Of a stretch of DNA of 64,000 nucleotides, positions 21,714-33,100 are shown piece after piece. The stretch's first letter is position 1. Every line of letters begins with the position of its first letter. The notes below the pieces were generated by a model. It saw only the letters and a list, made by a program, of their open reading frames with translations, did not search any database and was not told the DNA's origin. The position numbers and the translations under genes were made by a program. The stretch is from Klebsormidium nitens (lineage: Eukaryota > Plantae > Klebsormidiophyceae): the NCBI GenBank assembly GCA_000708835.1, contig DF236971.1, positions 248,001-312,000 on the forward strand. The letters are read 5' to 3'.

Positions 21714-23162
21714 GCGTTTCTACTTCTCAAGAAGCGACTGACTTTTGCAAAAGCATAACAAGTGTTCTGCTCACTGAAAGAGGATCGCCTGATATGAATC
21801 TCTATTGCGCAAGTCATGAAATAGCTCGACATCTCAATGTGAGATACACAGAGGTTGTGCTTGATTGCTAAGGTTTTTCATTGTCGCAGAGAGTTTTACC
21901 CCAATAGTGGATGCTTGCATAGAGATTTTTGGCGTGCAGACAAAGTTCCATACATGAGCATCACTCGATCCTCATGTCCATAGACTTAGTACTGCTTTAG
22001 CCCCTCTCTAGGCCTTTAGTAGCCAGGTATCATGTGCTTCAAGGAATACTGCATGAGACTCAGTATTCGGTGAATAAAAGTTGCTCAATGTAGGAGTTTC
22101 CGGTCGCATGTTGAAATCATGCATGATCCTGTTTTCTGATTCTGATCATGCACGCCTTTGATGCGCACGTCGGCTTCAAGACAATTGCAACCATCCGACC
22201 TTGCCCAAATGTGCCAAAATGTCCGAGCTACCCGGATGGTCAGACGCCGAAGGCCGAGACCATGACGGTTGTGGTCTCTTTTCGTTTTCGCCGTAGCAAA
22301 ATACTCTAAGGCCTAAGGCTTCTCATGGCATACATATGTGGTTTGTGTTTCTTCTACTTCTACTTCTTCTTCTACTAGTGCTTTTGTGTACTCCACTTAA
22401 CATTTGCAATGCCGGCCTTGCACCGTACCCACCATTGCTACATTGTCCTCAAGACACACTACATTCTCCTTCTCTCCTCGATCAACACGTACACACTCTC
22501 TAAAAATCGTACAAGCTGCTCAGCATGTCAGCAATGTACTTGGGGGATTGGGTGGATTGGGGACTGCAAATTGGAATTGGAGATTGGGTGACATGGCGAC
22601 TTGCTACGCTGGGGGCCAGCCCGCCTGCAGTCTGATAACGTCGGTGCATTATGCATTGCATGCATGGCATTTAGTAGCTACTGACCCTGAACCGTTCGAT
22701 GATGTCCCTGACTCGCTCGATGGAAGGTGGTGCATGCACTCGGGATCCGCTGCTGCATGCGACTGTCGCTGCTTGCTGATTTGCGGGTCACGTGGCCCCT
22801 AGCTAAGCAAGCGAGGAATCCGAGGATGCCGACAGGCTACAATGGCGTTCGAGTTCACAGTGGTGAGAAGTCTCGGATCCCTTTAGAGCTCAAGCTCTGG
22901 TGGTGAATGCAGATCAAGCCCTTCAGGGTTCATTTTTGTAGGGGGAGGAATATGAGTTAGAGATGGTCGTTCAGGCCTTGGCAGTGGGGCGCCCGCTAGG
23001 GGCCGCCCCTGGAGCAATTAGGAGCTTTGTCAGGGCGCTGCATGCGAGGTACGGCGCTTCCTGACGTTCCTCTCCTCTGTTTCATATCACTAGGAACCTT
23101 TTTTTGAACCTTTGAGGACTTAATTGGCTCCCGTACGCACTGCATGCTTACTGCATGCTTAC

Positions 23163-23879
23163 TGCGTCATTCCAGGGCAGCCATCGCTGCAACTGGTGAT
23201 GATTGCAGCATAAGGGGTTGCAAATATTGTGGTCTCTTCTCCTTTGTACTTCTGATCTGTGGAGGAGCTGTAACAAGCAAGGTCTTTCAAAGCATTGTCA
23301 AGTCAGCTCGAGTGCCATTCTGAGGTTTCCAAGCCAGTGGACAGTTCTAGTATTCTATCTTTTGTTTTGACAGTCAAGCTTGGCAAGTTTACTTGATTGA
23401 TCTGTGCCCCTTCAAAGCGGTGCTAGAAACACCATGTGGGCTGTCCAGATGCAGCCAAGATAGACAGATCTAGAAACATTACGTGGCACTCCTGTCTGGG
23501 AGTTGTAGCCCATTGGAGATCTTCCAAATAGGCAGAGCCTACTATATCCACAAATCTTAGGGCAAGAATTTCAGCACTGCAGCAGTTTTGAGGAGTGAGC
23601 TGATTAACATTGAAAGTGTGAATGCTGGGTTTTTGCACCGTCAACTGTCTTGACTACCTTGACAGAAGGGGTTTTTTCAAATGGTTGGATGTTGGTCGTT
23701 GCGCCAAAGTAGTCTTCAATTAGACTGTTAGTTGACCATCTACATTTGTCCTCGGACGTTTCATGGTTCCAGTCATTTGGTCTGGATTGCTTTGCAAAAT
23801 CCGTATTGAAAGCTAAGTAGGAAGCTGCTAAACAGAGATTGTCTCGTTTCGTCTCCAACAAGCGCTTTGTCACCCTCAC
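23163..23879 (-). CDS. Possible multi-exon gene or fragment of unknown function
   Basis: Three stop-free segments (..-23658, 23599-23483, 23267-23163) joined by GT-AG phase-0 junctions. No start codon found, and it abuts the 5' end of the + strand membrane gene. Confidence 0.3.
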
Positions 23880-23906
23880 TCTTGTTCCTCTGCTCCTGTT
23901 TTTCAG

Positions 23907-26900
23907 GCCCCTTCCAGTCCCCAGTGCCCGAAGACTCCCAAGTGTTAGACCTGCTTCCCGCGTCTATGCTTCTTCTCATTTACGCCCCACCAAGCCCTTT
24001 CTCAAGCGCTTACACTTTCGGGAGTCAGCCCCTTTGAACACCCAAATCATGAGGCGTTTTGCACTGCGCGCGGGTTCGAACAAGGGTGGGAACACGCCCG
24101 TCGATGAGAAAAGGGCCCCCGACGGCTCGCCCCCGAAGGAGGAAGCGGATCGGAGACTGCAGCAGGAGGGGGAGGGATGGTGGAAGACGGAACCGGAAAA
24201 GAAAGGGGAAACGGACGCCATGGTCACATGGCCCTCGGAAAAGATTACCGAGGTCTGGAAGGTGTTTTTCAAGCCCAACATGGGGTACACCGACACGTTC
24301 GGGTTTTCGGTGCCGATGCGTAAAACGGACGACAACGTGAGTACCATAGTTCTTTGGGGCGTCCTGGTTGCGGCATCGGGAGATTGGCTGATTATCAATG
24401 TCTGATTTGTTTTTGGAGCGCAGCCTTTCTTTGCTCTAGTCCTCTGCGGGCTTTTCTAGACTTCTTGATGTGCGATCAGAGAGTCAATTTTGATGGTTGG
24501 GCGGAAGAAAGCTTGCAAGCAGAGGCAATCAAGCTGTGAAGAAGCCCCTGCGTGGTTGCTCGGGAGACCTTCTCTGAACGCCATTTCCGTCGGGCGACGA
24601 TGATCTGTAGCTCGAACAGAGCGAAAAGGCGGAAGAATGATGAGCTTTTGGAGATTTTCAGACGAATTGTTTGCGAAGGACCGAGTTGAAGCAACCAGGT
24701 TCGGTCGCCCTCCCTCTATCGAAGTCTGCAAAGTCTTTTCCTGTATTTACTCGACTCACTGTGCTTGTGCCTTCCTCGAGTTCTTTGAGATACGACACTG
24801 CAACGTCCTTCTTGCCCTTACCTCCTCTGTTGCATGTCAATCTCAATCCCTTCAGATCCCCTCCTCCATTAATTTCAGATATTATTCACTTTCTCAGATG
24901 AACGGCGTTTGTGGTGCCTTCCCTTAACACGAGCCTCTGGAGTTTCCAAAGACGGAATCATATCCGCAATTCAGTTCCCCCCTGCATCCACAGAAAACGG
25001 AATCAGATTCGTTAAGCTGGCTTCTGACTTCTTTTACGTGGTGCAGCGCTCCCCCGAGGAGCGTGCAGCGGCTAGGGCGCGTGCGGCGGAGGCCGCTGTC
25101 AACATCGACGATGCGGAGCGCAGGCGGCGCATGCTCCTGGGGCTGATTCTCCTGGTGAGTGACGTCACTTGAAGTGCACTCGGTAACCTCCACGAAGTCT
25201 TTGACAGCAGTAGATAAGGACACCAGAGTTGTTAATAGCCTCATCATGCCTGCTCCATTCTCCCCTAAACCGAAGCAGCCGTGGTAATTTTCTTTGATAC
25301 GCGTCTTGAAATGAACAATATCTGTTGGGTGTGTCAGCCGGATCCACTTGGGCCGAATGTAATGCTCGATCAAAGGACTCTTCTCGTGCTCGCCGTATGT
25401 TTTGAGGAGGTTGTCAGATTGAAATCTGGCGCTTCACTTGGTTTCTGTGAACAATCTTTCCGCAGCAATATCACCGTGATTTGCCCGAACAGCCGTATTC
25501 TCCGCTCGGTTTCGCTGTCTTAGTCTTCAAGGAGACAACTTGTCTGTTTTATGTTGGATTAGATTCACACTCCGTTGTTGGGTTTTAGTGCATCGGCTTG
25601 GAGCCGTTTACCTTCCTTCACAAGAACGATCGGGCCGGTTCCTTCTCCAACATGATAGGTCTGTGCATTCGGTTGCGTTCCCGTTCCGTTGTGCAGGGCG
25701 TGAGCGGAGTTATCGCCACGATCATGGTTCAAAACCGCGCGAGCCCGTGGGAGCGTTTGTATATTCTGCCCATCTTCTTCCTGGGCGGCGCCGAGTTCGT
25801 GTCCGGTCTGACGGGTCTCTGATCCATAGCCTTTGTAAGTTTCTCTTAGCCCGAAAACGCTTTTGTTGTTGTTGTAGAAAGTGTCTGTAAGTTTCTTCGG
25901 CCTCAATAAGTTCTCGTTCTTTTAGGCAGTGATCGCTTGTCTCCGGTTTGACGGGTCTCTGATCCATAGCCTTTGTAAGCTTCTTCACCCTCGCATCAAA
26001 AAGCCCTCGTTGTTCCAGGAAGTGATTGCTTGTCTCTGATTTGACGGGTCTCTGATCCATAGCCTTTGTGAGTTTCTTCAGTCTTCGAAAGCTCTTGTCG
26101 CTCAGGGACTTGCTTCTTTGCTCCCGCCTTACGGTTCCTTGAGTTATCGCGGTTGAGACTTTTCTCAGCCCCAGAGATCTCTTGTGCCCTACTGCACTAG
26201 TGGTCGCGGGGATTTCAAAAATGTGGTGGAAAGCCTTGCGTAGTGGCCGTCGATATATCTCGACATTGAAGGTACCCGTGCTACAGTATCTGCCAAAAGA
26301 CTTGCTTTGCCTGTATCTACGATTCGCTCGTCCGAAAACGAAAGCGATAGGTCGTTTTTGGCTCTTCCTTGCGCCGAAAGCCAAACCTTTTTAAAAGCTG
26401 AGGCCTTGTCAAGCGCGTCGTTATCAGGAATGCCTCTCATTTCGCGGATGGTACTGTTGCTGACAAATTCATCGCCGTTTTCAAAAGAGGCACCGCTACA
26501 AGAGGGACTTCAGTGCTCAGCGGCGAGTCGCCAAAATGAAGCCTTTGGAATTGAATCCTGACTTCCTCTAGTCAAGCTTTCTGAACGTGGATTTGTGTCC
26601 ACTGCAGGCCAGTGTCTGGGATGTGGACGGCACTGGCATGCAAAAGGTGGACGACCCGGCGGTCGATATGCGCATTCGGAAGGTGGGTTAACCTCAGAAC
26701 CTCAAAACCCGGATCCGGAACTTAGAAAACTCTAGAACTCCAAAAGCCTTAAAGCTCATCAGCCTTAGCTGCGTGTAGCAGTTTGCCTACTGAACATCGT
26801 TTGCTGACGAGCAGAAGTTGAACCATGTCACCAGTTCTTTCATCGAGCGACGCAGATGCTTTCAGCAATTTGCCGGCTCATCATCGTCTGCTTTTAGGAA

Positions 26901-27573
26901 AGCTGAGCGAGTTTGTCCTGGTCATCTTGTAATCCGATATGTGACTGTTCTCGGCTGATCGCGCTTGCTTGTTTTTAGAATGTTGTCGCGTGGTTGCACC
27001 CATTATTGCGGATGAGAAAGCCCCCGTAAAGGCAAATCAAAGCTGTCCATCGTGGTCCATCTCACAAAATCCGTGGTTCAAGCTTCTGTAGGACGAGTAC
27101 TCTGGAGGAGCGCGTGTGGGAAGTCAGAAAGCAAACTGCCGTTCTAACCAATCTAGAATTTTGTGCAATATTATCTGGAGTTTTCTCCGTTTTGAAGGAG
27201 TCAACGTGAGCAATTCCTCTCGTGTCCCTGGACGAACATTATTTATTTCCTCCTTTAAGCAATTGACGTGCGCCGCCCACAAAGCGTTTCTGATCCGAGT
27301 AACTGTAGCGAACTGCTCAAAGTAACGCCTTTCTCCGTCACTCTGCAGAAAGTGGTTGTCTTCGTACTAAGCTACTCCCTTCTCTGTCTCCTGGTTGTCG
27401 GGCCATTTGCTTTTTGGTCACTGTAACCCGGTTGGAGGGTCGAGATTTAGAGAAGATGTATGTAGACGCCTCAAAGCTAGTGTTTTCTGGTGCAGAAAGT
27501 GGTTGGTTTCGTCTCGTTTGGGGCGGTGGCTTCGCTGTTCGTTATTGGGGCGTTCTGCTTCTACCCGCTCTGA
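23907..27573 (+). CDS. Putative membrane selenoprotein (in-frame UGA = Sec at 25820-25822)
   Basis: Exons ~23907(or ATG 24049)-24336, 25047-25154, 25697-25834, 26608-26682 and 27496-27573, all joined in phase 0 by GT-AG. Product ...NIDDAERRRRMLLGLILLGVSGVIATIMVQNRASPWERLYILPIFFLGGAEFVSGLTGL-U-SIAFASVWDVDGTGMQKVDDPAVDMRIRKKVVGFVSFGAVASLFVIGAFCFYPL*. SECIS 48 nt after the stop. 5' end unresolved. Confidence 0.88.
25789..26075 (+). repeat. Three tandem copies of the UGA-containing exon end plus splice donor
   Basis: TGACGGGTCTCTGATCCATAGCCTTTGT(A/G)AG occurs at ~25809, ~25949 and ~26042. Confidence 0.9.
27349..27426 (+). CDS. Duplicated alternative terminal exon of the selenoprotein gene
   Basis: CTCTGCAG acceptor at 27348, then KVVVFVLSYSLLCLLVVGPFAFWSL*TAA. 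Same 25-aa length and phase as exon 27496-27573, and alignable with it. Confidence 0.6.
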   Translation, partial: KVVVFVLSYSLLCLLVVGPFAFWSL

Positions 27574-27621
27574 TAGAGGTCTCGTGACCAGTAGCTTGCA
27601 TGACTCGGTGCGGTAGGCAGC

Positions 27622-27698
27622 GTAATCCTAACCCCCATGACTGCTTCTCCCGAAAAGAGCTCGTTTCTTGGGAAAAGCACGAACTCGGTTAGGATTAC
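27622..27698 (+). promoter_or_regulatory. SECIS element (eukaryotic type II)
   Basis: Helix I GTAATCCTAACC/GGTTAGGATTAC (12 perfect bp). Core ATGAC (27637-41) opposite CGAA (27680-83). Helix II TGCTTCTCCCG/TGGGAAAAGCA (11 bp, 1 mismatch). Unpaired AAA (27653-55). Apical mini-stem AGAG/TTCT. Confidence 0.92.
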
Positions 27699-28496
27699 CT
27701 GACCAGCTGCAAGTGGGTTAGTGCAAGCTAGGAAAGTGAAAAGTTGGCAGACAGTCTTGTACGATAGTCAATTTAATAAATGAATCAACCTACCATTTTT
27801 CAAAAGCCTCCCTATCCTCAAGCTGGCAGTCCAACGGTTCCTGAAGTACCGGCAATCTGTGCGAGTTGCTCGCAAGTGTGGGTATCCCACCAGTGAGGGT
27901 GAATACAATTAGATTGCTGCTTGCATAGATGCATATGTTCGCGATGACATAATCTTCGACGTCTTGATACATTGAACAGAATTTGTTATCCTTGCGTCTA
28001 ATTGACCAAGTACACTGAAAGCATCTCATTGTTGAAATTATGGTTGTGGCAATATCAGCCCGATGTTAGGCCGGCAATTTGGATAGGTACATGACATTGC
28101 GCTGCATATGATGACGCGAATGTTAAACCATACGGACGTACATCTATATGTGGTCAGCCTATTCACAACTTGGTCGGGCAGGTTCACGATTATGTGCATA
28201 GGGTGGATGACAGCAACTACTGTGGTACTTGCAATTTTCCCTGAGGTGTCCACTCATTGTTTGGAGGGCGTCGTCGATTCTTCCTCACATGCTCCCTCTA
28301 ATCCGCTGTCTTGAAATTCAGAAGCCCTTACTTCTAATACTTTCTACTGAAGCAATCTTTTAAGTGTGGAATCGCTATCTACTCAGCTCTTTGTAGTATG
28401 CGGATTCCGGCTTCACGAGATGCTGAACGGATTGGGACTCTGAGATAGATTTTCAAGCACAGCTTTCCTACCTTACAAGGTGCTTTGACAACAACC

Positions 28497-30134: not shown

Positions 30135-33100
30135 CTAGCGTAGGTCGTTTTCCTGCTCGCTCTCATCGACAGCGTCATCCTGCGGGGCTGGCACGTCCCC
30201 AAAGTCTAGCGTCTTCGGCGACCCCATTAGCGACTTTGCACCGGGTGACGTCGCCTGGTAGCCGCCCTCCCGTTCCTTCCGCGCCGAGCCGCCCTCCCGC
30301 CGTTTCGTTGCGGCGGGTGCTTTTTCCGCTGCGAGTGGGGCGTGAACTAAAACCGGCATCGCCCATTCGGCCCTCTCGATCCTATCCTGCTGTGCCCGCC
30401 TATCTAGTTTCGCTCCGTCCGTTCGCGCCTGCGGCGACGCCAAAAACTCGAAGCGGAGCGTCCACTTGACGTCGACCAGGGGGGTCGTAAATGACTGTGG
30501 GGCGTCCCCCGGGATGGTGAAGATAAAGTGGGTGTGAATGAGGTCGGCGGACAGCTCGTGGTACTCGGTCTGTACCTTTGGGATGATTTGAGAACCGGAG
30601 GGGCCGCGGCGGGAGGGGTGCAGGAAGGACGGGGTGACGATTTCTTGCGTTTCGAGCGTCACTGACACCTGCGGATGGAGGGAGACAAGGACAGGGTCAG
30701 CAGAATCATAAACGCGGCGCAAAATGGTGAATTCTTTAAAGCCAATCTGGTTGAGAAAGTCGAATGGGTGTCGAGATCTACGGAAGCAACCCACGAATCT
30801 GAACCGCAGCATCTCCGCATGGCCTCTTCAAAACGTGGACAGAACAGAACAGAGGAGTAAACGCCGTTGTCCGACAGCCGCAACTTTGTAGGAGATCGTC
30901 TCGACATTCCGTCGACTACAGACTATGTCAGTCGGCATCAGTGTTAGGTTGGCTAGGGTGAAGCATGCCGTGTGTGTGAAGTCAGCTTTGTTCAAGAAAC
31001 AATTCTTTGACTTGGTTCATTCCTATAGTCTTAATCTTCTGTTTGGGTAGCTCAGTTGGTTAGCGAAAAGGACTGAAAATCCTTGTGTCGGTGGTTCAAG
31101 TCCACTCCCAGACAAGAATGGCTCTTCTCGCCTTGCGTGGGAGCAGTCAATTATAGCTCTTACACTAGATGACCCCAGGTGACCAGAGCCCCGCCGGCAC
31201 AAATCCGATACCGGGAGAGAAGACGAGAACAAGGAATCGGTAAGAACATGGACAGAGAAAGGGGCAGGAAAGGAAAATAGCAAACAGTCCGACCTTGAGA
31301 CATCGCCGCTCGCCGGGCCGGTGGTCGCTGAAGTCTAGGGTTCCCGAGACTGCGTCCCCCAAAGTGTAAACAGGCTCCGGGTTTCGCGGAGAGAAGCGGA
31401 CCAGCAACTGGTCCCCTATTCGGATGTTGTACGTCCTGCAAAGAACGGCCGTCCATTGAGGACGCCACCGTCCGAATGTTTGAAAGCAAAGGTCCTCAAG
31501 TAAAAGCAATAAAAGATTGCAGTGTTGACGCAGCTCTTCCTCACTGCAGAAAGACTCAGGCAACGGAAAGCAACCTTCCAACCCATGCATCTCCGACGCT
31601 CCTTGTAACACACCAGACGCGTCTACTAAGAGACAGAACAAATGCGCAGTGGATACATCCGCAAGTGCTAGCCGTCAGGTTAATTGCGCTGTGCATCGGA
31701 CGGAAAGAAGCCCAGCGAGCGTCCATTTGAGCAGTCTCCAATCGAACTTCGACCGCGAAAAGAGGGCGTGAAGACGGCGCAATCCTGCAAGTACTCGGTC
31801 TTGGCAACCCGGTTTACAGAACCAAACAGGCGGCCGCTCTCTGCTTGAAAGGGTGAAGGAACCTCTTGAAAATGCTCAGTTACCTTCCCCTTATAGCGGA
31901 GAGCAAAGGCGAGGGGGGCGGGGAGGACATGTCGTCTGAGTCGTTCCGCGCTAAGATGCCCGGAGCGGGCGGAATGGGGGTGCTAGTGAAAGCGCGCAGG
32001 TCGAGGGAGCTGGCCCGCTCTAGTTCGGGGGTGCCGTTGCCGCTCTTGGACGCAATGGGGGCGTCCGCCAGCTCTGAGAGTTAGGGTGGGAGAGGATGAG
32101 GGAGATCTTTAAGCAGGACGTCCGGAGAGTTACTAAAGATAATGTCCTGGCTTCCTTACTCGCGGTTCCTCTTCCTGATTCAATCAAATGATTTTCTTGT
32201 TTCTTCTTGCCAATTGGCATCCAGCGGAAACCCATACTGTGGACACTTACTTTCCTGAGGGGAATGAGAGGTGAGAACAGCAGTGGACTCCGTCACAGAT
32301 CGGCAGAAGCAGTCTCAGGGCAGCCTTGGATGACGAGAAGGACTCGACATCCCATTCTCGCCAAGCTCGCAAACCAGGGATTGATTCCCGGACGTTCAAT
32401 GTTCTCGTGACGGTCTTAGAAGTCACTGGCAAAGCTCAACCCAGCAGTAAAGCAGGATGAGCGACGAGAGCGGGCACCCTTATGGCGTGGACCGTGGGGG
32501 ACTGTTCCGTGGAGATAACAAGAAAACGAACAGACTCAAAAGAGTCGTGCCTTGACGTTGGAGGCCAGTTTCGGAGCACGTTGCACCAACTCTTGACAGG
32601 GACCAACAGACCGTGCTAGGAGCCACACAGCTTCACACCTTGCGAAAACACACTGCGATTGCCATTACATTCATTAGAGCCAGAATGAGCAGTCAAGCCG
32701 CGAACCAAAGCGCAGGCAAGAATGGACAAGCCGAAAATCTCAACGAAGGTTTCGAGAATAAAGTGGTTATACCTGTGCCGTTGGACTGCGTGCGGGATGC
32801 GGGGATGCTTTGCGACCCTCCTAGGAAGAAGGCTGAGGGGGATCCCCGTGAATCCAGTGGAGATCCGGGGGGGAAGGGTGTCCGGTCGACCGGCAAAGAA
32901 ATTGCTCTCAAGGTTGGGGACTTGGCGGGGACTTCTATAGGCTGCGAGGCGGAGGCTTCGTTTCGGGGGGGTGGATCACCGTCGTCTTCCTCCCCCCCGG
33001 AGAGGGCCTCGGCAGCAGCAATCCAATTCGACCGGGCGGTCTTTTCGCGGCAGAGGATGCCAATCTCGACCGGGCTGGTCGGGACGATGCCTGGAGAATT

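What the first reader, a model, noticed from the sequence alone, without database searches (positions are those of the whole stretch)
23907..27698. Hidden selenoprotein gene: in-frame UGA, continued downstream exons and a canonical SECIS
Seen in sequence: the apparent stop TGA (25820-22) is followed by TCC ATA GCC TTT and a perfect GTAAGT donor. Two further phase-0 exons continue the protein (ASVWDVDGTGMQKVDDPAVDMRIRK; KVVGFVSFGAVASLFVIGAFCFYPL). The 3' UTR holds a type II SECIS about 210 nt downstream of the UGA in the spliced mRNA. Established: UGA plus an AUGA/AA/GA SECIS specifies selenocysteine, and land plants lack Sec while many algae keep it. Inference: this is a three-helix membrane selenoprotein with Sec in GL-U-SIA just after a helical hairpin, possibly organelle-targeted given the Arg/Ser-rich N-terminus. 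It resembles algal membrane selenoproteins and bacterial NIxxxERxRR..C proteins as I recall them, but I cannot confirm the family. Standard annotation would truncate or split the gene.
Basis: partly seen in the sequence, partly recalled or inferred. Interest (0 to 1): 0.95.

Follow-up and report, generated by a model that had tools for sequence, protein, structure and literature searches.

The report
Mis-annotated membrane selenoprotein gene in Klebsormidium
This is a real, expressed selenoprotein gene of the streptophyte alga Klebsormidium nitens whose in-frame UGA encodes selenocysteine; it belongs to a little-studied algal membrane-selenoprotein family first listed in 2007, and the public gene model is wrong.

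Summary
RNA contigs from at least five studies confirm the splice chain 24336>25047, 25154>25697, 25834>26608 and 26682>27349 or 27496. The TGA at 25820-22 is present in the RNA. Three related Klebsormidium-like sequences keep the TGA. In the one compared codon by codon, the 54 codons after it differ almost only at third positions (22 of 25 changes). A type II SECIS lies at 27622-27698 (Rfam SECIS_1 28.6 bits; 31.2 bits in the relative). Seven of its base pairs show compensatory changes in an otherwise diverged UTR.

The window is Klebsormidium nitens. The public model KFL_000220370 shifts frame to avoid the TGA. The true product is about 304 aa with Sec at 250. It has an Arg/Ala/Pro-rich presequence, three membrane helices and a WDVDG hairpin.

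The family is not new. It is "hypothetical protein 3" of Ostreococcus (Lobanov 2007), not MSP. About 30 homologues stop exactly at the Sec position, and a few carry Cys there.

What I add:
- A confident fold model resembles long DUF2892/YgaP-like proteins and the fungal Rax1 C-terminal domain.
- One member is fused to glutaredoxin.
- K. nitens has two alternative last membrane-helix exons.

Verdict: real and well supported, a new or overlooked member of a known kind. The function is inferred only.

The parts
22963..23048 (+). First coding exon, starting at ATG 22963 and followed by donor GT at 23049. It encodes the start of an Arg/Ala/Pro-rich presequence (MVVQALAVG...).
   Evidence: The loose 5' ends of the RNA contigs match 23017-23046 exactly. 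The N-terminus of the public model P0001 agrees.
23907..24336 (+). Second coding exon. It holds the rest of the presequence and the conserved VTWPSEK..WKVFFKPN.GYTD.FG block.
   Evidence: Joint 24336>25047 is seen in X1, X5, X6 and X7. Relatives are 69-100% identical here.
25047..25154 (+). Third coding exon. It encodes the amphipathic helix, the VNIDDAERRRR motif and the start of TM1.
   Evidence: RNA joints; translation; family alignment.
25697..25834 (+). Fourth coding exon. It encodes TM1-loop-TM2, the Sec codon, then SIAF, and ends at a GTAAGT donor.
   Evidence: RNA joints 25154>25697 and 25834>26608. L003 and L004 have the same exon with the TGA.
25820..25822 (+). In-frame TGA read as selenocysteine, residue 250 of the 304-aa precursor, in the motif GLTGL-U-SIAF.
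   Evidence: The TGA is present in all RNA contigs and conserved in L001, L003 and L004. Homologues have TGA here in L008, L009, L010 and L011. P0046, P0049, P0073 and P0074 have Cys at this column.
25939..25984 (+). First intronic copy of the exon-end/donor segment (93% identical), TGA included. It is apparently not used as an exon.
   Evidence: the repeat finder families D1 and D2. Only intron-level RNA depth (6-8 against 250-400 in exons) and no joints.
26032..26077 (+). Second intronic copy of the exon-end/donor segment (89% identical).
   Evidence: no RNA joints.
26608..26682 (+). Fifth coding exon. It encodes ASVWDVDGTGMQKVDDPAVDMRIRK: the WDVDG beta-hairpin and an amphipathic helix.
   Evidence: RNA joints. 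About 86% nt identity to L001, L003 and L004, with one amino-acid change. The WDVDG column is invariant in the family.
27349..27426 (+). Alternative last coding exon 5a, encoding TM3 variant KVVVFVLSYSLLCLLVVGPFAFWSL and ending in TAA. When its acceptor is used, the 5b region becomes 3' UTR.
   Evidence: Joint 26682>27349 in X6, X7 and X5, and contig 27347-27523 in X3. blastn found no copy in L001, L003 or L004.
27496..27573 (+). Last coding exon 5b, encoding TM3 variant KVVGFVSFGAVASLFVIGAFCFYPL and ending in TGA followed by TAG. This is the variant conserved in relatives.
   Evidence: Joint 26682>27496 in X1, X3, X5, X17 and X19. Conserved in L001, L003 and L004.
27622..27698 (+). Type II SECIS element in the 3' UTR. 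AUGA is at 27637-40, the apical AAAA at 27653-56 and the GA at 27681-82.
   Evidence: Rfam SECIS_1 28.6 bits, E 4.5e-4. Fold z = -4.2. The orthologous element in L001 scores 31.2 bits. The four-sequence alignment has 28 pairs, 7 of them with compensatory double changes.

Best explanation
This is a nuclear gene of Klebsormidium nitens with six coding exons, spanning 22963-27573. It encodes a precursor of about 304 aa.

The UGA at 25820-22 is recoded as selenocysteine (residue 250) by the eukaryotic Sec machinery. A type II SECIS in the 3' UTR directs this; its AUGA lies 228 nt (5b mRNA) or 375 nt (5a mRNA) downstream of the UGA. These steps rest on evidence shown here.

The product belongs to the algal selenoprotein family first listed as Ostreococcus 'hypothetical protein 3'. 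Its parts in order are:
- a variable targeting presequence;
- a conserved soluble block;
- an amphipathic helix ending in NI..ER.RR;
- a TM1-TM2 hairpin;
- the Sec/Cys immediately after TM2, at the membrane surface;
- a WDVDG beta-hairpin;
- an amphipathic helix and TM3.

Alternative 3' splice sites give two interchangeable TM3 exons.

The following steps are inferred, not shown. The protein is imported into an organelle, probably the plastid. Its single Sec is a membrane-surface redox centre on the same side as the N-terminal domain. That centre is oxidised to a selenenylsulfide or selenenic state and recycled by glutaredoxin/glutathione. The fold is shared with long DUF2892-annotated proteins, and the Sec falls where YgaP-like TM domains appear to carry a Cys.
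For: Gene structure: splice joints in RNA contigs of 7 runs from at least 5 studies, at exon depths of 35-500 against 2-15 in introns.

Translation past the UGA: against the relative's transcript L001, the 54 codons after the TGA carry 25 nucleotide differences, 22 of them at third positions. That is 20 synonymous and 3 non-synonymous codons, binomial P = 2e-8. The two genomic relatives L003 and L004 keep the TGA, SIAF plus GTAAGT, and exons 4 and 5b.

SECIS: Rfam full-length matches of 28.6 and 31.2 bits, with 7 compensatory pairs. AUGA, AAA and GA are invariant while the rest of the UTR does not align.

Family: HMMER against 1.84 billion representatives returned 46 hits. About 30 of those inspected end on the residue just before the Sec column. 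All four contigs I checked have TGA there and an open frame with WDV.G after it. P0046 (Ostreobium), P0049, P0073 and P0074 carry Cys at that column. The published Ostreococcus sequences have ..SAKSGL-U-NIAQAGVWDV.G...

Machinery: K. nitens is reported to have eEFSec, PSTK, SBP2, SecS, SPS and tRNA-Sec (PMC6627142).

Fold: the AlphaFold2 model of the Cys homologue P0049 has pLDDT 94.6 and pTM 0.83. Long DUF2892-annotated proteins match it at TM 0.70-0.80.

Redox link: P0043 is a glutaredoxin (PF00462, E 1.6e-17) fused N-terminally to a Sec-form domain of this family. Bacterial YgaP-like_TM clusters are 88% glutaredoxin-fused.
Against: There is no direct biochemical proof of Se incorporation for this protein or for any member of the family: no 75Se band has been assigned and no mass spectrometry done.

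Both Rfam SECIS scores are below the gathering score of 35, and the hit disappears in multi-kb searches. A SECIS was not recovered by Rfam in the more distant homologue L008.

The function is inferred only. No Pfam family reaches its threshold; the best is PF11127 at 20.8 bits against a cut-off of 25.3. hhalign to E. coli YgaP gives 3% probability. No solved structure matches.

Organelle targeting rests on composition only. No targeting predictor was available.
Confidence: 0.92

Rival explanations
1. The TGA is an ordinary stop. The gene then makes a 249-aa two-helix protein, and exons 4 and 5 are spliced 3' UTR.
For: Gene callers end about 30 homologues at this codon. Under selenium limitation some termination at UGA is expected for any selenoprotein mRNA (general knowledge).
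Against: Differences after the TGA sit at third codon positions in 22 of 25 cases, and the downstream frame is open in every relative checked. Cys-form homologues read straight through into the same WDVDG and TM3 segments. The SECIS is conserved with covariation. On general expectation, a stop followed by two exon junctions would make the mRNA an NMD target, yet it is abundant.
Confidence: 0.04
2. The UGA is read through by a near-cognate tRNA (as Trp, Cys or Arg) without selenocysteine, and the hairpin downstream is not a functional SECIS.
For: The Rfam SECIS scores are below the gathering threshold. There is no Se-labelling evidence for this family.
Against: The hairpin has every SECIS hallmark: AUGA, a 10-11-bp helix II, AAA in the apical loop, the GA, and a mini-stem. 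It is the only conserved island in the 3' UTR and has 7 compensatory pairs. The Cys/UGA alternation at a single column is the classic selenoprotein signature. The organism has the Sec machinery (PMC6627142).
Confidence: 0.03
3. The locus is a pseudogene or an assembly or sequencing error at 25820.
For: Duplicated fragments of the exon end lie in the adjacent intron, which could suggest local instability.
Against: RNA contigs from seven runs are identical to the window. The same TGA occurs in three related sequences and in distant homologues. Purifying selection is evident on both sides of the TGA.
Confidence: 0.01

Closest known systems
'Hypothetical protein 3' selenoprotein of Ostreococcus tauri and O. 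lucimarinus (Lobanov et al. 2007, PMC2375036, supplementary file 2). It may be counted under 'Hypo' in Jiang et al. 2020 (PMC7539508); I did not confirm this.
   Same: The order of motifs is the same..VNID.EER.RR.., two hydrophobic helices..S.(K/L)(S/T)GL-U-(N/S)IA.., VWDV(D/E)G.G.Q, an amphipathic stretch and a last hydrophobic helix. There is a single Sec at the same column and a SECIS in the 3' UTR. P0028 from my search shares PLFFALGFVGSAKSGL with the O. tauri sequence.
   Different: The Klebsormidium/Coccomyxa branch has -SIAF/ASVWDVDG..DDP.VD..IRKKV- where the Ostreococcus branch has -NIAQAGVWDV.G..IED..IA..IR.KVNDFN-. It also has a longer conserved N-terminal block (VTWPSEK..WKVFFKPN) and, in K. 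nitens, two alternative TM3 exons. It comes from a streptophyte, not a prasinophyte.
MSP, the 'membrane selenoprotein' of Ostreococcus, Chlamydomonas, Volvox and Dictyostelium (PMC2375036)
   Same: Both are small multi-pass membrane selenoproteins of algae with unknown function.
   Different: MSP has its Sec in a PSLVGS-U-CWPLL motif inside the first helix and lacks NI..ER.RR and WDVDG. No part aligns by eye. It is a different family.
YgaP-like transmembrane domain / DUF2892 (Pfam PF11127; E. coli YgaP b2668)
   Same: Both have a basic ER..R-type motif before a two-helix hairpin, and a small-residue stretch ending in G-(F/L)-C/U straight after TM2. Compare YgaP ..AGISGF-C-GMA.. with ..SGLTGL-U-SIA... 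Three family members give sub-threshold PF11127 hits over profile positions 1-50 of 66 or a shorter part of them. Long proteins annotated DUF2892 match the model at TM 0.70-0.80. Both are found fused to glutaredoxin.
   Different: No member reaches the Pfam cut-off, hhalign gives 3% probability, and E. coli YgaP is not among the fold hits. The classic domain has two helices only. This family adds the WDVDG hairpin and a third helix. It is eukaryotic, carries a targeting presequence and uses Sec.
RAX1_C (PF27892), the C-terminal membrane domain of fungal Rax1/RGS bud-site proteins
   Same: The predicted fold covers residues 24-143 of the model at TM 0.77-0.81 (S. pombe Rax1, E 1.7e-4).
   Different: Sequence identity is only 14-20%. 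The context differs (an RGS domain, polarity landmark). No Sec is known there, and I did not test whether a Cys is conserved.

Membership tests
Algal selenoprotein 'hypothetical protein 3' (Lobanov 2007) | A single in-frame UGA in the motif G-L-U-(N/S)-I-A, immediately after the second hydrophobic helix | tested here: met
   The window has GLTGL-TGA-SIAF. The published sequences have SAKSGL-U-NIAQ. The same column holds TGA in L008-L011.
Algal selenoprotein 'hypothetical protein 3' (Lobanov 2007) | N-I-(D/G/S)-x-x-E-R-x-R-R motif before the first helix, and a VWDVDG motif after the Sec | tested here: met
   The window has VNIDDAERRRR and ASVWDVDGTG. These are invariant columns in alignment A1 and conserved in A3.
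Algal selenoprotein 'hypothetical protein 3' (Lobanov 2007) | Significant sequence similarity to recognised members | tested here: met
   phmmer with exons 2-3 of the orthologue P0004 returns 46 family hits down to E 1.6e-17. These include P0028, which shares a 16-residue identical stretch with the O. tauri protein. I did not run a direct pairwise alignment to the published sequences, to avoid typing them.
Algal selenoprotein 'hypothetical protein 3' (Lobanov 2007) | A eukaryotic SECIS element in the 3' UTR | tested here: met
Any selenoprotein | Selenium is actually incorporated at the UGA | not testable with these tools
   This needs 75Se labelling or mass spectrometry. The literature reports the Sec machinery in K. 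nitens (PMC6627142).
MSP (membrane selenoprotein) | VGS-U-CWP(L/V)L motif in the first transmembrane helix | tested here: not met
   The motif is absent from the translated product. The MSP alignment was read.
YgaP-like_TM / DUF2892 (PF11127) | A score above the Pfam gathering cut-off of 25.3 bits | tested here: not met
   The best score is 20.8 bits, E 4.3e-4 (P0009:140-204). Others are 13.8 and 13.3 bits, and most members give no hit.
YgaP-like_TM / DUF2892 (PF11127) | The same fold, with the conserved Cys after TM2 at the position of the Sec | tested here: inconclusive
   Foldseek matches DUF2892-annotated proteins at TM 0.70-0.80, E about 1e-4. Atlas two-helix YgaP clusters give only TM 0.41-0.47. 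hhalign places the family Cys on the YgaP ..SGF-C-G.. Cys, but at E 0.013 and probability 3%.

The most novel reading that the evidence does not exclude
The 'hypothetical protein 3' selenoproteins are the eukaryotic, organelle-targeted, Sec-using branch of a very old membrane-domain superfamily. That superfamily would include the bacterial and archaeal YgaP-like/DUF2892 proteins and the fungal Rax1 C-terminal domain. In it, one Cys or Sec at the membrane surface acts as a redox or sulfane-carrier site served by glutaredoxin. On this reading, K. nitens keeps it as a selenoprotein that homology-based surveys (each reporting only two) may have missed, and tunes it with two interchangeable last membrane helices.
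Probability: 0.4. Interest if true: 0.55.

Novelty: new member of a known kind. Interest (0 to 1): 0.4.

Why it matters
Klebsormidium is one of the sequenced algal relatives of land plants. Land plants lost selenocysteine entirely, and two dedicated surveys list only two selenoproteins in this alga. A firmly supported Sec gene here is therefore relevant to what was lost on the way to land.

It also shows a systematic annotation failure. The public models in K. nitens, Coccomyxa and Elliptochloris frame-shift or splice around the codon, and about 30 database entries are truncated at it.

The fold model, the sub-threshold YgaP-like/DUF2892 signal and the glutaredoxin fusion give the first testable functional hypothesis for a family that has stayed 'hypothetical' since 2007. 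Still, it is one more member of a known selenoprotein family, not a new mechanism.

Tried and rejected
- Pfam on single exons returned nothing. Pfam on full Cys homologues gave only chance-level DUFs.
- The Rfam search of the 6-kb region found no SECIS. The hit appears only in a short search. A multi-locus search likewise lost the L001 SECIS, and L008 gave no Rfam SECIS even in a short search.
- Tandem Repeats Finder missed the exon-end copies. The repeat finder found them.
- A profile search of PDB sequences gave only chance hits such as P450 EryF. Foldseek against PDB gave nothing with E below 1.
- hhalign against E. coli YgaP was not significant.
- MSP membership was rejected after reading the published alignment.
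- I could not find which two K. nitens selenoproteins the surveys reported. The supplements held as text do not list them.
- No paper in the searched library holds both 'DUF2892' and 'selenoprotein', and the three that hold 'YgaP' and 'selenocysteine' are unrelated by title.
- The window holds no tRNA-Sec, only tRNA-Phe.
I used pieces, the orthologue P0004 and natural Cys homologues instead.
Full report
**What is in the sequence**

The region 23700-28000 reads as an intron-containing eukaryotic gene on the + strand. Two further exons with ..cag acceptors (26608-26682 and 27496-27573) continue the frame. The 3' UTR folds into a long hairpin (z = -4.2). Rfam SECIS_1 matches it end to end at 27628-27692, with 28.6 bits and E 4.5e-4 in a 161-nt search. 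That score is below Rfam's gathering score of 35. The hit was not reported in a 6-kb search, and the tool notes that its filters are stricter on longer input. Taken alone, the SECIS call is therefore suggestive rather than proven.

**Transcript evidence**

Public RNA runs hold the locus. Logan contigs of X1, X5, X6 and X7 and of X3, X17 and X19 carry these GT..AG joints:
- 24336>25047
- 25154>25697
- 25834>26608
- then either 26682>27496 or 26682>27349

Summed contig depth in exon bins is 35-500, against 2-15 in introns. No contig differs from the window by a single letter, so the TGA is real.

The contigs also carry an upstream exon. Their loose 5' ends match 23017-23046 exactly. The ORF therefore starts at ATG 22963, and 23907 is an internal acceptor. 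The full CDS is 915 nt, giving 304 codons with the TGA at codon 250.

**Organism and annotation**

A protein search with the second coding exon returned KFL_000220370 of Klebsormidium nitens at 100% identity. That 323-aa public model has the right N-terminus. After the third coding exon it inserts a spurious exon and reads the rest in another frame, which avoids the TGA.

**Is the UGA translated?**

L001 is a metatranscriptome contig from a relative about 75-85% identical at the nucleotide level. It has the same TGA and an open frame after it. Over the 54 codons downstream there are 25 nucleotide differences, 22 of them at third positions. That makes 20 synonymous and 3 non-synonymous codons, binomial P about 2e-8. 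The upstream exons show a similar pattern.

Two genomic relatives (L003, L004) keep the exon structure, the TGA, SIAF plus GTAAGT, exon 4 and exon 5b.

The 3' UTRs are otherwise not alignable, but the SECIS is. In a four-sequence alignment the consensus structure has 28 pairs, 7 of them with compensatory double changes, and AUGA, AAA and GA are invariant. The L001 element scores 31.2 bits against SECIS_1. The apical mini-stem makes it type II.

The AUGA lies 228 nt (5b mRNA) or 375 nt (5a mRNA) after the UGA.

**The family**

I ran phmmer with exons 2-3 of the orthologue P0004 against 1.84 billion representatives. It gave 46 hits. About 30 of those inspected end on the residue aligned just before the Sec (..S.xxGL, then stop).

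I fetched four of their contigs. All have TGA at that codon and continue in frame with ..(N/S)(I/V)A...WDV.G... One of these is P0024, whose caller had written W for the TGA. Another is the glutaredoxin-fused P0043.

P0046 (Ostreobium quekettii), P0049, P0073 and P0074 carry Cys at that column. The annotated Coccomyxa and Elliptochloris models splice around it.

The supplement of Lobanov et al. 2007 prints 'hypothetical protein 3' of O. tauri and O. lucimarinus, with ..VNIDDEERARR....PLFFALGFVGSAKSGL-U-NIAQAGVWDV.G... This is plainly the same family. The MSP alignment in the same file (VGS-U-CWP) is unrelated. The family has therefore been listed as a selenoprotein since 2007 and has no assigned function.

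**Context in K. nitens**

Two surveys report a complete Sec machinery and only two selenoproteins in K. nitens/flaccidum (PMC6627142, PMC7539508). I could not find which two, so this gene may or may not already be counted.

**Structure and function**

An AlphaFold2 model of the Cys homologue P0049, built with the 38-row family alignment, is confident: pLDDT 94.6, pTM 0.83. Its elements in order are:
- an N-terminal helix (residues 3-24);
- TM1 (30-56);
- TM2 (67-83);
- Cys86 in the loop just after TM2;
- a short beta-hairpin holding WDVDG;
- a long helix (107-136) whose end is TM3.

No solved structure matches.

In AlphaFold DB clusters the best non-family matches fall into three groups. The first is prokaryotic proteins of 125-147 aa, two of them annotated DUF2892, at TM 0.68-0.80 and E from 2.6e-7 to 1.6e-4. 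The second is the C-terminal domain of fungal Rax1/RGS proteins at TM about 0.78. The third is other members of this family.

Three family members give sub-threshold Pfam PF11127 (YgaP-like_TM) hits. The two longer ones cover profile positions 1-50 and 3-50 of 66, and the third covers 4-33. The best is 20.8 bits against a cut-off of 25.3. hhalign puts the family Cys on the Cys of E. coli YgaP ..SGF-C-G.., but without significance.

P0043 fuses a glutaredoxin N-terminally to a Sec-form domain. An Atlas cluster of bacterial YgaP-like_TM proteins is 88% glutaredoxin-fused. P0052 carries a SnoaL_2 domain instead.

From the positive-inside rule (inference), the RRRR before TM1, the Sec after TM2 and any N-terminal glutaredoxin lie on the same side of the membrane.

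My working model is a membrane-surface selenol or thiol redox site recycled by glutaredoxin/GSH. This is inference only.

The first 80 residues hold 13 Arg, 11 Ala, 10 Pro, 7 Ser and one acidic residue. Several homologues begin with long basic or signal-like N-terminal extensions. Together these suggest organelle import, probably into the plastid. I did not test this.

**Extra anatomy**

The last 46 nt of the Sec exon plus its donor occur twice more in intron 4, at 25939-25984 and 26032-26077. These copies show only intron-level RNA depth and no joints.

Exon 5a (27349-27426) is a diverged copy of 5b. It has the same length, 50% nt identity, and is equally hydrophobic. It is used in X6, X7, X5 and X3. 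blastn did not find it in the relatives.

**Verdict**

Both the observation and the core interpretation are confirmed. The gene is a new or overlooked, mis-annotated member of a known selenoprotein family, so its novelty is modest. The possible link to the DUF2892/Rax1_C fold and to glutaredoxin is the part worth following up.

Noticed in passing
window 27349-27426 vs 27496-27573: There are two tandem, equally long (25 codons plus stop) last exons, selected by alternative 3' splice sites. They encode different hydrophobic TM3 helices. Both isoforms are assembled in RNA runs. 5a was not found in the relatives L001, L003 or L004, so it looks like a recent K. nitens duplication.
   Followed up: partly
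window 25939-25984 and 26032-26077: Two intronic copies (93% and 89% identical) of the Sec-exon end, including the TGA and a GT donor. They show intron-level RNA depth only and no splice joints use them. They could act as decoy donors.
   Followed up: partly
L003 6925-6956 and L004 9022-9056: In the related genomes the first ~35 nt of the Sec exon is duplicated about 100 nt upstream of the real exon. Small tandem duplications around this exon seem to recur in the lineage.
   Followed up: no
window 27571-27576: The 5b reading frame ends in TGA directly followed by TAG. L001 and L003 keep TGA-TAG, while L004 has TAA-TAG. This terminal TGA is only 63 nt from the SECIS AUGA. The tandem stop may guard against a second Sec insertion.
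   Followed up: no
P0011, P0075, P0076 (Coccomyxa), P0077 (Elliptochloris), P0001 (K. nitens): Public gene models of this family in several green-algal genomes splice around or frame-shift past the Sec codon. About 30 database proteins are truncated at it, and one caller wrote W for TGA (P0024).
   Followed up: yes
L011 169-1038 (P0043); P0052: Natural fusions of this membrane domain with an N-terminal glutaredoxin (CPYC) and with a SnoaL_2/NTF2-like domain. The glutaredoxin fusion is itself a TGA (Sec) form.
   Followed up: partly
window 31040-31115: A tRNA-Phe (GAA) gene lies about 3.5 kb downstream of the selenoprotein gene. There is no tRNA-Sec in the window.
   Followed up: no
window 22952-22960: A minimal upstream ORF (ATG AGT TAG) lies 11 nt before the main ATG at 22963, inside the transcribed 5' exon.
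   Followed up: no
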